Source: Podarcis tiliguerta
Taxonomy: Eukaryota
Assembly (NCBI GenBank): GCA_965153285.1
Contig: OZ229110.1
Length of the DNA stretch: 64,000 bases
Strand: one strand, 5' to 3'
Every line of letters begins with the position of its first letter. The first letter of the stretch is position 1. Both the position numbers and the translations under genes were made by a program. Positions 42,401 through 45,400 of the stretch are shown here, one piece after another. Below the pieces are notes generated by a model that worked only from the letters and a program-made list of their open reading frames with translations, was not told the origin of the DNA and did not search any database.

Positions 42401-45400
42401 ATATTAGCCACAAGCAAAATTGAAAGTTCATGTGGAAATTAGTTAGTTCTGGTGGTAAATGAAGTTGAGCAGCGATCTTTCTGCTGCAGTTCTGACTACA
42501 TTTAGCATTGCAAGCCTATCAAATAGAAGAACTGAAAGTGTTTTGACAGAATGAAAAGCCGGGGTGCCAACAACTAAATGTTACATTTTGTGTCTTTTAC
42601 CTGATATTTTATAGTTCTCTTACGGTGTTTTTAATCATAGACTGCTACAGAAGAGGAAAACAGCCATGGACCAATTAATGGCATGCTTAATGCACCAAGC
42701 CTTGGTTCTCCAATTAGAGTCCGCTCAGAGACCACACAGCTAGATCGGGATGTTCCTCTGGTGCGGAAGCTACGATCAATTCACAGTTTTGAACTGGAGA
42801 AACGTCTGACCTTGGAATCCAAGCCAGATACAGATAAATTTCTGGAAGTCTGGTATGTAATGGCTTTTATTTTGCTAAGCTTTCTTAGCAGTTGCTTTGC
42901 TTATAGTGAGTCATCTTTAATTGATTAGTTATTTGGCACAGATTTCACTGTTACTCAGGCCATATGATTGACCCTACAAATGCTGGGAAAATAAAGTCAG
43001 GTTTTGGGAATGGGGAGCCAGTAATTCATAATATAATTTGAGAAATCCAGCTCTAAATGATTAGAACAGGGGTAGCCAACATGGTGCCCTCCAGATGTTC
43101 TTGCACTATAGCTCTCATAATTCCTGGCCATTTGACATGCTGAGTGTTGATGAGAACATCTGGAGGATGCCACAGGAGCTACCCCAGAACATCTACTAGA
43201 AATAGAAATGTAATGATATTGATAACAAATGGCCTAATTTCACTTAACATGGTTTACACAATCCTAATTTGCTTGATCATGTTTCCTTAATTTCTCTCAA
43301 CATTCCCAAGCATGGAGAAGAAGAAAAGAGAGTTGAATCCTGGCAAAGAATCTGCTGTTGCAGCTTTTCAAAAACCACCCATGCCTCCAGTTGCTTCCAG
43401 TCATGAGCATGTTTGGCACTATGATGAAGAATACCTACCTGAAGCTTCCAAGCCCATTTCTGGCAGCTCTCCAGAACAGGGTGATGGTGTTGTCAGCAAT
43501 GGATATGTGGCAGTCAATTTGAGTTCCTGCCAGCAGGAGGTTGACTCCAAGGAATGGGTCATAGTGGATAAAGACAGAGACTTGCAGGATTTCAGGACTA
43601 ATGGAGTTTTAGGGCATAAAACAACTGGAAGCCCCTCCGATGAGGAGCCTGAGGTGCTTCAAGTCCTTGAAGAGCCCCCACAAGAAGATAAGCTTAGAGC
43701 TCATACCAAGAATACAGCTATGGGACCAGCATTGGATCTGGATATTGAGTGTCATGGTACAGCCGCTTCTGAACAGTTTACAGATCAACTAGAACTTCCA
43801 GTTGGAACTGCTGGTCATCTTCTTGCAGTCACACCCACAAGCCTAATGGAGGCCCAAGCAGAAGGGGCTCTTACTCCAGTAAGTGAAGTGTTAATAGCTG
43901 TAGCTCATCTCTGTTGTATTCAGACACTGTGAGAAATCTTTAACTGAAAGCATGAGATCTGAAGCTTAATCAAAATACCGCATGGAGATAATATCCTGCT
44001 TGCAGTCAATTTAAGAAGAGTGTGATAGTTAATTGCACTTTGCAGAAGCAATTTTTCAGGGTTTAGCATGTATTTCAATAACGTCCAAAACTCTCAATTT
44101 TGATTTAATTAAGATACATGCTAAGAAAGCACAAGAATGATGGTATGTTTGAGAATTATTGAAAATACAGTGGTACCTCTAGTTACGAACTTAATTCGTT
44201 CCGGAGGTCTGTTATTAACTTGAAACTGTTCTTAACTAGAGGCGTGCGTTCGCTAATGGGGCCTCTTGCTGCTGCGCTGCCGGCACACAATTTCCATTCT
44301 CATCCTGGGGCAAAGTTCTCAACTCGAGGTAACTCTTCCAGGTTAGCAGAGTTTGTAACCTGAAGCATTTGTAACCTGAGGCGTTTGTAACTTGAGGTAC
44401 CACTGTACTAAGGTTTTGCAATGACGTAATATAAATAATGTTGTTCCTTTATTGCAGAAAAAGTGGCTTGTTTAGTTCCACAAAACCACTTTTGAAATAT
44501 AAAAAACATGAGGAATGCACCTAGTTTGAATAATTACCTGATATAATTTAACTTTTATTGAATTCTGTTTTTATTACCAATGGCCAGTAACTGTTGATTG
44601 TAGATACTGAAGAATTTTGAAAATACTAACCCACCCACCAGGTGTAAACTTGTTTTCAGTTCTCTGGTTCTTCACAGCCCACTGTCTATTCAGTTCTTTG
44701 TCACTTTTGCTTACTTTGAAACTCTTAACCTTTCTCAACAGTATAGCCCTGTCTCTGTCTGCTCTAATCAGCATCATGTGGCTGCCAGTATTTACTCTTT
44801 CTAATATTGGCTACTGGAGGAAACAAAGTTCAAAGCTACAGAGAACAGACCGAAATAAAGTGATCTTTATATATTTGAAGCATTTTCTTTTTTCCTTGCC
44901 ATGTTGTTCTCACAGCTCAACTCACTTCACATGCTGCATTTCTCCATCCCAAGAATTTCAAGTCCCATCCTCCGTACCCTGAGCCCTATAACCCACCCGG
45001 ACCCTGTGAAAGAGGCTGGCTTTCCAAGGAGTCAATCAGGAGACAGCCACTCTTCCTCTTCCTGGTCAGCTGCCCGTAGGCAACTTCCTGTCATTCCCAG
45101 TGGAAACAAGTTCCCCCCTGTCATTCGCATCTCAAAAGCACAACTTCAGCAGGTGAATGCATCTTCATCTAAGCAACTACACTGTGTCAGTCATTTGCCA
45201 TGTTTTATGGGTTCCCAGCTACTTTGCATTGCTCAAATGTAGACTTATGTATAAATACTTATTTTTTGAAAACACTGGTCTTGAGAAATAAAAATAATAG
45301 CTTAAGAGATGTAAACTTCAGACAAAAGCACTACTTAATATGCAGAGGCTAGAGCAGGAAAATTCGATTAAGCTGATTTACTACGCAGAAAATGAAATTT

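What the first reader, a model, noticed from the sequence alone, without database searches (positions are those of the whole stretch)
44916..45152. Frame-preserving TTBK2 cassette exon encoding a RIM-BP-type SH3 ligand (RRQLPVIP)
Seen: strong acceptor, CAG|GTGAAT donor and exactly 79 stop-free codons in phase 0/0 between two phase-0 exon boundaries, giving 1314 aa. The peptide is Ser/Pro-rich like the TTBK2 tail and is not TE-like. It has SP sites, RSQS and RRQLPVIP. Established: RxLPxxP is a class I SH3 ligand; RIM1/2 (RQLPQ[VL]P) and Cav2 channels (RQLPQTP) use it to bind RIM-binding proteins, and TTBK1/2 phosphorylate the synaptic vesicle protein SV2A. I do not recall this segment in canonical human TTBK2. 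Inference: a tissue-specific, possibly neuronal, exon that could dock the ciliary kinase on an SH3 scaffold such as the presynaptic active zone.
Basis: partly seen in the sequence, partly recalled or inferred. Interest (0 to 1): 0.8.

Follow-up and report, generated by a model that had tools for sequence, protein, structure and literature searches.

The report
Known optional TTBK2 coding exon
The 237-base stretch is a real, very old optional coding exon of the cilium and brain kinase gene TTBK2; it is spliced into lizard mRNA and already sits in public gene models from coelacanth to birds (no mammal was found), so it is genuine but not new, and its proposed role as a synaptic SH3 docking site is untested.

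Summary
Observation confirmed. Window 44916-45152 (+) is a 79-codon, stop-free, phase 0/0 segment with AG/GT splice sites. It lies between the TTBK2 exon ending at 43878 and the exon starting at 50571.

RNA contigs from two independent studies of a sister species join 43878 to 44916 across a GT..AG intron. They leave the genome exactly at the predicted donor.

The exon is already annotated. In RefSeq, Podarcis muralis TTBK2 isoform X1 (1318 aa) contains it and isoform X2 (1235 aa) skips exactly 83 residues. Orthologous exons sit at the same junction in other squamates, turtles, crocodilians, about 30 birds, axolotl, frogs and coelacanth. No mammalian TTBK2 and no TTBK1 match was found.

The cassette is at least as conserved as most of the constitutive tail around it. 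It is predicted to be disordered and carries near-invariant short motifs:
- R-x-L-P-x-x-P in 53 of 54 distinct exon peptides.
- A calcineurin-like P-V-I-R-I-S in 45 of 54, with its core in 54 of 54.
- [RK]SQS.

Docking on RIM-BP and neuronal specificity are untested, and the motif fits many SH3 domains.

Novelty: already known as annotation, with function undescribed. Interest is low to moderate.

The parts
43311..43878 (+). Constitutive TTBK2 exon upstream of the cassette (...[16 protein letters not shown]), with donor CCA|gtaagt
   Evidence: Its translation is identical to P. muralis TTBK2. An RNA contig from run X1 ends exactly at 43878.
44890..44915 (+). Polypyrimidine tract and AG acceptor of the cassette
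   Evidence: The last ~15 nt are conserved as 'MLFSQ/AMFSQ' in read-through ORFs of birds and lizards. The joint lands at 44916.
44916..45152 (+). Alternative coding exon of TTBK2: 79 codons, phase 0/0
44990..44991 (+). Site of a 12-nt in-frame deletion (T-H-L-T) in this species relative to its sister species and all other lacertids
   Evidence: table 4 (ACCCACCTCACC put in behind 44990 in X1 and X5). Searches show SPITHLTTHPDP in Podarcis, Zootoca and Lacerta.
45027..45038 (+). R-S-Q-S basophilic phosphosite-like motif, inside the conserved block [FLI]P[RK]SQSAES
   Evidence: RS.S in 44 of 54; frogs have KSQS.
45078..45098 (+). R-Q-L-P-V-I-P, a class I SH3-ligand consensus (RxLPxxP)
   Evidence: 53 of 54 distinct exon peptides; the exception is Carettochelys RRQLPVIL.
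45117..45134 (+). P-V-I-R-I-S, which matches a calcineurin PxIxIT-type pattern; this is the most conserved block of the exon
   Evidence: strict pattern 45 of 54; core [VIA]I[RHC][IL][ST] 54 of 54. AlphaFold pLDDT is highest here, 77-82.
45153..45158 (+). Donor gtgaat, which lacks the +5 G
   Evidence: The RNA contig pieces stop matching the genome at 45154. That is the exon end plus the 'GT' that intron and next exon share (table 8).
50571..51835 (+). Constitutive TTBK2 exon downstream of the cassette ([13 protein letters not shown]...)
   Evidence: It matches P. muralis TTBK2.

Best explanation
Window 44916-45152 is a genuine, ancient, alternatively spliced coding exon of TTBK2. The window comes from a Podarcis-like lacertid lizard. 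Inclusion inserts 79 residues (83 in sister species) into the long disordered tail of the kinase, between ...[10 protein letters not shown] and VTIPRPS...; skipping joins those two exons directly. Both forms are already in public gene models as RefSeq isoforms X1 and X2. The insert has no fold of its own. What selection has kept for roughly 400 million years (my estimate from the taxa involved) is a set of short linear motifs. These are a basophilic phosphosite block [FLI]P[RK]SQSAES and a C-terminal 27-residue block, RR-x-LP-x-x-P-x-G-x-K-[FY]-P-[PS]-V-I-R-I-S-K-[AS]-Q. The C-terminal block holds a class I SH3 ligand (RxLPxxP) and a PxIxIT-like calcineurin docking pattern (PVIRIS). My inferred mechanism is that the exon is a switchable docking and regulation module, letting the long isoform recruit an SH3-domain partner and/or a phosphatase that the short isoform cannot. 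I put this at about 0.6 for 'a docking module of some kind', about 0.35 for 'an SH3 domain is a partner', and about 0.07 for RIM-BP specifically. What is shown: the exon is real, spliced, alternative in annotation, orthologous across non-mammalian sarcopterygians, and constrained. What is inferred: any binding partner and any tissue pattern.
For: Anatomy.

RNA: contigs of runs X1 (study P1) and X5 (study P2) carry the GT..AG joint 43878->44916. They have zero depth on the unique intron stretches 43916-44131 and 44456-44887. X5's 368-nt contig runs 43788-43878, then 44916-45154, then 26 more letters that are not intron. Cassette depth matches upstream-exon depth (11.4 against 11.1 in X1).

Conservation: ORFs from other genomes are 75-90% identical across the exon and lose similarity right at both splice sites.

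Same junction in annotated proteins:
- Frog Leptobrachium with the exon (P0022) and without it (P0028).
- Frogs, axolotl, alligator, turtles and about 30 birds.
- Squamates and coelacanth.
- P. muralis X1 XP_028579994.2 (1318 aa) against X2 XP_028580014.2 (1235 aa, a precise 83-aa skip), and the Ensembl skip model A0A670I0N6.
- 88 models with the exon and 6 that skip it.

Constraint: between lizard and bird the cassette is 82% identical, against 63% and 51% for the flanking 100 residues. Between lizard and coelacanth the figures are 56% against 53% and 43%. The last 30 residues are 26/30 identical between lizard and axolotl. All length differences are in-frame.

Motif retention.

Disorder: AlphaFold pTM 0.17 and almost no secondary structure (one 3-residue helical turn).
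Against: - The donor junction 45152->50571 and the skip junction 43878->50571 were not seen directly. The stretch laid did not reach 50571.
- The tissues of the RNA runs are coded and unknown.
- The two raw-read RNA runs (X23, X24) had only about 2 reads each on the upstream exon and none on the cassette. That is too shallow to interpret.
- No binding test was possible.
- One turtle has lost the last proline of RxLPxxP. Frogs have S instead of P before VIRIS.
- RefSeq X-isoforms are computed models, not curated transcripts.
Confidence: 0.9

Rival explanations
1. One reading: a neuron-specific exon whose RRQLPVIP docks TTBK2 on RIM-binding proteins at the presynaptic active zone, close to its substrate SV2A.
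For: RQLPVIP fits the published RIM-BP ligand consensus RXXPXXP / RQLPQ(L/V)P / RQLPQTP (PMC10814857). The frog variants RKLPVTP and RRLPATP resemble the Cav2 form RQLPQTP. TTBK2 phosphorylates SV2A Thr84 (PMC10951003). The motif is kept in 53 of 54 exon peptides.
Against: RxLPxxP is the generic class I consensus and would fit many SH3 domains. The Gln after LP in the RIM and Cav motifs is V, A, I or F here. No neuronal splicing signature was found, with no GCAUG within 300 nt. The exon looks like the major form in two RNA sets of unknown tissue. No literature links TTBK2 to RIM-BP or to SH3 partners.
Confidence: 0.07
2. The functionally dominant element is the PVIRIS block, acting as a PxIxIT-type docking site for calcineurin (PP2B). 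The long isoform would then be a Ca2+-regulated, phosphatase-coupled form of TTBK2. This could act together with the SH3 ligand.
For: P-V-I-R-I-S matches the pattern P[^P]I[^P][IV][^P] (pattern recalled from the ELM resource, not checked here) in 45 of 54 exon peptides. The core VIRIS-like block is present in 54 of 54 and is the most conserved part of the exon. It has the highest pLDDT. It lies in a disordered, Ser-rich, phosphorylatable context. Calcineurin is reported at centrosomes and affects cilia length (title and abstract of PMC10163345, listed).
Against: Frogs, one bird and the unnamed lineage P0023 have S instead of the first P. The last position is S, not T. No paper in the library links TTBK2 with calcineurin: none of the ten papers listed mentions TTBK2. 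The pattern is short and degenerate, and binding is untested.
Confidence: 0.15
3. In lizards the exon is effectively constitutive, and the annotated 'skip' isoforms are minor or artefactual models, so there is no regulated cassette here.
For: X5's contig runs straight through upstream exon and cassette without a branch. In X1 the cassette depth (11.4) equals the upstream exon depth (11.1).
Against: In X1 the upstream-exon contig stops exactly at 43878 and the cassette contig overlaps it by 30 letters. I read this as a branch in the assembly graph there. Skip models exist from two pipelines for P. muralis (RefSeq X2, Ensembl) and for an owl, a turtle and a frog. The donor lacks +5G, which is typical of regulated exons.
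Confidence: 0.15
4. A chance open frame, or a recently exonised intronic sequence with no protein-level function.
For: Open in-phase AG..GT segments of this length occur by chance in this intron: nine of 79 or more codons, counting the cassette itself.
Against: Spliced RNA. Orthologues at the same junction from coelacanth to birds, with only in-frame length changes. Conservation is higher than in neighbouring constitutive exons. The segment is single-copy and not a transposon.
Confidence: 0.01

Closest known systems
RefSeq 'tau-tubulin kinase 2 isoform X1' models of non-mammalian vertebrates (for example Podarcis muralis XP_028579994.2, Zootoca vivipara XP_034968353.1, Alligator mississippiensis XP_019352127.1, Latimeria chalumnae XP_014352849.1)
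   Same: The same exon at the same exon-exon junction. The P. muralis exon peptide is identical to the window's apart from four residues. The matching skip isoform is also annotated (P. muralis X2, XP_028580014.2).
   Different: The window's species has a 12-nt in-frame deletion (T-H-L-T), giving 79 rather than 83 codons. These records are computed models, and I found no paper that describes the exon.
Human/mammalian TTBK2 (longest isoform 1244 aa, 14 coding exons)
   Same: Same gene, same flanking exons (...MEAQAEG..T | .TIPRPS...), same kinase domain, and the same downstream SxIP and proline-rich tail motifs.
   Different: No mammalian protein with this insert appeared in either region search (length windows 1286-4091 aa, about 740-2350 aa). 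None appeared in the HMMER scan of 1.84 billion representatives. Mammalian genomes themselves were not examined.
RIM-BP SH3 ligands of RIM1/2 and Cav channels (RQLPQL/VP, RQLPQTP, RLLPPTP)
   Same: R-x-L-P-x-x-P with a preceding basic residue, in a disordered region.
   Different: The residue after LP is V/A/I/F rather than Q/P. There is no evidence of binding, neuronal inclusion or synaptic localisation.
Calcineurin PxIxIT docking motifs (NFAT-type PxIxIT)
   Same: PVIRIS fits the P-x-I-x-I-[TS]-like pattern and is the best conserved block of the exon.
   Different: It has Ser at the last position, the first Pro is replaced by Ser in frogs, and binding has not been tested.
Known linear motifs of the TTBK2 tail (EB1-binding SxIP motifs; proline-rich CEP164-binding region)
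   Same: The same logic applies: the non-catalytic tail works through short docking motifs in a disordered, Ser-rich chain (PMC10951003; tail sequences).
   Different: Those motifs lie in constitutive C-terminal exons and are present in mammals. The cassette motifs are optional, and the window's exon contains no SxIP.

Membership tests
Alternative (cassette) coding exon of TTBK2, as in RefSeq isoform X1 versus X2 | Lies between the same two constitutive exons as the annotated exon | tested here: met
   Flanks are ...[10 protein letters not shown] and VTIPRPS... in the window and in 88 annotated proteins.
Alternative (cassette) coding exon of TTBK2, as in RefSeq isoform X1 versus X2 | Canonical AG/GT boundaries, length a multiple of three, no stop codon | tested here: met
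   237 nt, 79 codons.
Alternative (cassette) coding exon of TTBK2, as in RefSeq isoform X1 versus X2 | Spliced into mRNA at the predicted sites | tested here: met
   The acceptor joint 43878->44916 (GT..AG) is seen in contigs of two studies. The contigs leave the genome at 45154, which is the donor plus the 'GT' shared with the next exon. The donor partner itself was not shown directly.
Alternative (cassette) coding exon of TTBK2, as in RefSeq isoform X1 versus X2 | A skipping isoform also exists | tested here: inconclusive
   Skip models exist in the same genus and elsewhere (P0101, P0110, P0074, P0075, P0028). A contig break at 43878 in X1 suggests a branch.
Alternative (cassette) coding exon of TTBK2, as in RefSeq isoform X1 versus X2 | Sequence orthology and coding constraint | tested here: met
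   E-values of 1e-28 to 1e-35 to read-through ORFs. Identity is equal to or above that of the flanking 100-residue stretches in 8 of 9 species pairs (the corn snake is the exception), and length changes are in-frame only.
Class I SH3 ligand | [RK]xxPxxP core | tested here: met
   RQLPVIP at 45078-45098; present in 53 of 54 orthologous exon peptides.
Class I SH3 ligand | Accessible, disordered context | tested here: met
   AlphaFold2: pTM 0.17, almost no secondary structure, mean pLDDT 64. Ser+Pro make up 32% of residues.
Class I SH3 ligand | Binds an SH3 domain | not testable with these tools
RIM-BP ligand (RIM1/2, Cav type) | RxLPxxP resembling RQLPQ(L/V/T)P | tested here: inconclusive
   The R-x-L-P-x-x-P frame is met. 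The Gln after LP is not conserved (V/A/I/F).
RIM-BP ligand (RIM1/2, Cav type) | Neuronal expression of the exon and binding to RIM-BP SH3 domains | not testable with these tools
   Run tissues are coded. No GCAUG lies within 300 nt. No binding test was possible.
Calcineurin PxIxIT docking site | P-x-I-x-I-[T/S]-like pattern in a disordered region | tested here: met
   PVIRIS at 45117-45134. The strict pattern is met in 45 of 54 and the core in 54 of 54. The pattern was recalled from ELM and was not checked against the resource.
Calcineurin PxIxIT docking site | Binds calcineurin A and is competed by PVIVIT | not testable with these tools
   No test was possible, and no literature link was found.

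The most novel reading that the evidence does not exclude
The cassette is a switchable dual docking module, combining a class I SH3 ligand with a PxIxIT-like calcineurin site beside a conserved phosphosite. It would tie the ciliogenesis and SCA11 kinase TTBK2 to a scaffold and a Ca2+-dependent phosphatase in fish-to-bird vertebrates. Mammals would have lost it, so part of TTBK2 regulation would be invisible in mouse and human work. In its boldest form the scaffold is RIM-BP at the presynaptic active zone.
Probability: 0.2. Interest if true: 0.6.

Novelty: already known. Interest (0 to 1): 0.3.

Why it matters
TTBK2 starts cilium assembly and is mutated in spinocerebellar ataxia 11. Its long tail works through short docking motifs. 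An optional 80-residue insert has been kept since before tetrapods, it is more conserved than most of the tail around it, and no mammalian counterpart was found. That marks it as a regulatory module that studies centred on mammals would not see. As a database fact it is not new, because gene models from coelacanth to birds already carry it. This follow-up adds four things:
- direct splice evidence in a lizard;
- the phyletic range;
- the near-invariant motifs RxLPxxP, VIRIS and [RK]SQS;
- the point that RIM-BP is only one of several candidate partners.

Tried and rejected
I therefore had no DNA of the orthologous loci and could not compute dN/dS, and I argued constraint from proteins instead. 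I ran no further search on this.
- **Raw RNA reads were too shallow.** Runs X23 and X24 gave about 2 reads each on the upstream exon and none on the cassette, which says nothing about inclusion.
- **Only one stretch could be laid.** With one read-laying run and a 6000-letter limit, I laid 43700-45300.
- **The open frame is not significant on its own**.
- **Pfam gives nothing for the exon**.
- **The scan for neuronal splicing motifs was negative or uninformative.** There is no GCAUG within 300 nt, and YCAY, UCUU and YGCY occur at unremarkable counts.
- **The literature is silent.** No paper describes this exon, a TTBK2-SH3 interaction or a TTBK2-calcineurin link.
- **Complex prediction was not run.** No SH3-domain or calcineurin sequence was available from session results, and I make no binding claim.
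The exon was searched alone by reference, and database proteins were searched by id with the 'region' option.
I re-ran it with short patterns only.
- **P0023 could not be named.** It is an unnamed ORF, 64% identical to the coelacanth exon, and it has no source name.
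Full report
**1. What is in the sequence**

TTBK2 lies on the + strand of the window. Several long ORFs translate to recognisable TTBK2 tail segments.

- The exon before the finding runs 43311-43878 and ends ...[10 protein letters not shown] with donor CCA|gtaagt.
- The exon after it starts at 50571 (ag|GTT ACA = VTIPRPS...) and ends at 51835.
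- Between them lies a 6692-nt intron with 39% GC.
- Window 44916-45152 has a pyrimidine-rich acceptor (ttttccttgccatgttgttctcacag|), 79 stop-free codons and a CAG|gtgaat donor.

The open frame by itself means little. The intron holds 211 in-phase AG..GT stop-free segments of at least 20 codons. Nine of them, counting the cassette, are at least 79 codons long, and most of the others cluster at 47277-47688.

**2. RNA evidence**

The exon sequence was found in 20 public runs from 8 studies. Fourteen small runs were guessed to be RNA. I laid four runs on 43700-45300.

- The contigs of X1 (study P1) and X5 (study P2) carry a GT..AG joint from 43878 to 44916.
- They have no depth on the unique intron parts 43916-44131 and 44456-44887, so they are cDNA.
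- X5's 368-nt contig covers 43788-43878, then 44916-45154, then 26 further letters that do not match the intron.
- The intron starts GTGAAT and the next exon starts GTTACA. A contig spliced at 45152 should therefore match the genome up to exactly 45154, as observed. The partner itself was not displayed, so the donor junction is inferred.
- In X1 the 2454-nt upstream contig stops exactly at 43878, and the cassette contig overlaps it by 30 letters. I read this as a branch point of the assembly graph, which would mean a second (skip) continuation exists. That is an inference.
- Depths are 11.1 upstream and 11.4 on the cassette, so inclusion looks like the major form in that sample.
- The two raw-read RNA runs (X23, X24) had about two reads each on the upstream exon and none on the cassette, which is uninformative.
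- Tissues are coded and unknown.
- The sister species carries 12 extra in-frame bases (ACCCACCTCACC, T-H-L-T) after 44990.

**3. Relatives**

A word search with the exon alone found five clusters of short ORFs from other genomes that are 75-86% identical over the whole exon. These ORFs read through the splice sites, and similarity ends right at the acceptor and a few residues after the donor. One cluster occurs on 297 contigs, including metagenomes. Its exon peptide differs by one residue from that of annotated galliform birds, so I take it for chicken-type host DNA.

HMMER against 1.84 billion representatives gave eight hits. One is a 2338-aa Ensembl read-through model of the frog Leptobrachium leishanense that fuses TTBK2 and CDAN1. 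It carries a homologous 83-residue segment exactly between EAQADGALTP and LTIPRPS. A sister model lacks exactly that segment. No TTBK1 and no mammalian protein appeared.

Two region-restricted searches started from database proteins. They showed the exon in 'tau-tubulin kinase 2 isoform X1/X2' models of:

- eight frogs and the axolotl;
- alligator and other crocodilians;
- turtles;
- about 30 birds;
- squamates (Zootoca, Heteronotia, Varanus, Rhineura, Pogona, Candoia, Pantherophis, Crotalus);
- the coelacanth.

The lacertid cluster holds X1 models of 1317-1318 aa for Zootoca, Lacerta agilis, Podarcis raffonei and P. muralis. It also holds P. muralis X2 (1235 aa) and an Ensembl model, both of which skip precisely the 83 residues.

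The window's flanking exons are identical or nearly identical to P. muralis.

A review states that the longest human isoform has 1244 aa (PMC10951003). I did not examine any human or other mammalian DNA.

**4. Constraint and content**

I compared P. muralis with nine species.

| Comparison | Cassette | Upstream 100 aa | Downstream 100 aa |
|---|---|---|---|
| Lizard vs grouse | 82% | 63% | 51% |
| Lizard vs axolotl | 64% | 51% | 44% |
| Lizard vs coelacanth | 56% | 53% | 43% |

- The cassette is at least as conserved as the 100 constitutive residues on either side in eight of the nine species. The corn snake is the exception, with 76% for the cassette against 79% upstream.
- The last 30 residues are 26/30 identical between lizard and axolotl.
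- All length differences are whole codons.
- AlphaFold2 on a 12-row alignment gives pTM 0.17 and almost no secondary structure. pLDDT rises to 77-82 only over the conserved C-terminal block. This is a disordered segment carrying linear motifs.

Motif retention over 54 distinct exon peptides:

| Pattern | Retained | Note |
|---|---|---|
| R.LP..P | 53/54 | The turtle Carettochelys has RRQLPVIL |
| P[^P]I[^P][IV][^P] (PVIRIS) | 45/54 | |
| Core [VIA]I[RHC][IL][ST] | 54/54 | |
| RS.S | 44/54 | Frogs have KSQS |

The motif patterns are from my memory of ELM and the literature. Only the RIM-BP consensus was checked against a paper (PMC10814857).

**5. How it most likely works**

Shown: the exon is an optional, in-frame insert in the disordered tail. 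It has been under purifying selection since before the split of coelacanth and tetrapods.

Inferred: it acts as a switchable docking and regulation module. The RxLPxxP element is a textbook class I SH3 ligand. It fits the RIM-BP consensus, but it also fits many other SH3 domains, and its residue after LP differs from the RIM and Cav motifs. The [RK]SQS block is a plausible basophilic-kinase site.

Nothing here shows neuronal specificity. There is no GCAUG within 300 nt, and inclusion appears dominant in two RNA sets of unknown tissue. No paper in the library describes the exon or an SH3 or calcineurin partner of TTBK2.

**6. Comparison with what is known, and novelty**

The feature is the same object as the extra exon of RefSeq TTBK2 isoform X1 in the same genus and in dozens of other species. 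As a sequence feature it is therefore already known, though only as computed annotation. Function, motif conservation and the apparent absence from mammals are undescribed as far as I could find. The RIM-BP hypothesis remains a testable but low-probability special case of 'SH3 ligand'.

**7. Limits**

The exon was searched alone by reference.
- Complex prediction was not used, because no partner sequence was available and I make no binding claim.

**Verdict**

Novelty: already known. Interest: about 0.3.

Noticed in passing
window 44990/44991: This species lacks 12 in-frame bases (ACCCACCTCACC = T-H-L-T) that its sister species and all other lacertids have inside the cassette. The surrounding ACCCACC repeat suggests replication slippage.
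   Followed up: partly
window 44132-44455: A high-copy interspersed repeat lies in the intron upstream of the cassette. Summed contig depth reaches thousands to tens of thousands, there are many variant letters, and reads come from both strands in RNA runs.
   Followed up: no
window 34746-35528 (+): A 260-aa ORF inside a TTBK2 intron matches the Pfam LAP2alpha domain (PF11560, E=2.4e-8). It may be a transposon-borne or domesticated gene fragment.
   Followed up: no
window 13871-14281 (-): An ORF whose C-terminal peptide looks like the tail of BovB/RTE-type LINE reverse-transcriptase ORFs common in squamates. This is my recollection; Pfam gave no hit.
   Followed up: no
window 49668-49771: A perfectly adjacent 52+52 nt inverted repeat (81% complementary, no spacer) lies in the intron downstream of the cassette. 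It looks like a MITE-type hairpin.
   Followed up: no
P0112 (Latimeria chalumnae XP_064420760.1), directly after the cassette: The newer coelacanth model carries a further 32 residues (AEYSEYSEVEQK...TVRQ) between the cassette and the next exon. This is either a second optional exon or a retained piece of intron.
   Followed up: no
P0098, P0099, P0102, P0105 (lacertid TTBK2 isoform X3, about 1200 aa); P0113 (alligator X3): Annotated isoforms keep the cassette but end early (...SSSQYW in lizards). They lose the Ser/Pro-rich extreme C-terminus, so a second alternative event exists at the last exon.
   Followed up: no
P0022, P0025, P0028, P0029 (Leptobrachium leishanense): Ensembl models fuse TTBK2 with the neighbouring CDAN1 (codanin-1) into proteins of 2300-2390 aa. 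They are named after codanin only, which is probably a read-through annotation artefact.
   Followed up: no
P0023 (151-aa ORF from Logan contigs): An unnamed lineage has a divergent copy of the exon ([20 protein letters not shown]), 64% identical to the coelacanth exon. It could be a lungfish or another fish, which would push the exon's age further back.
   Followed up: partly
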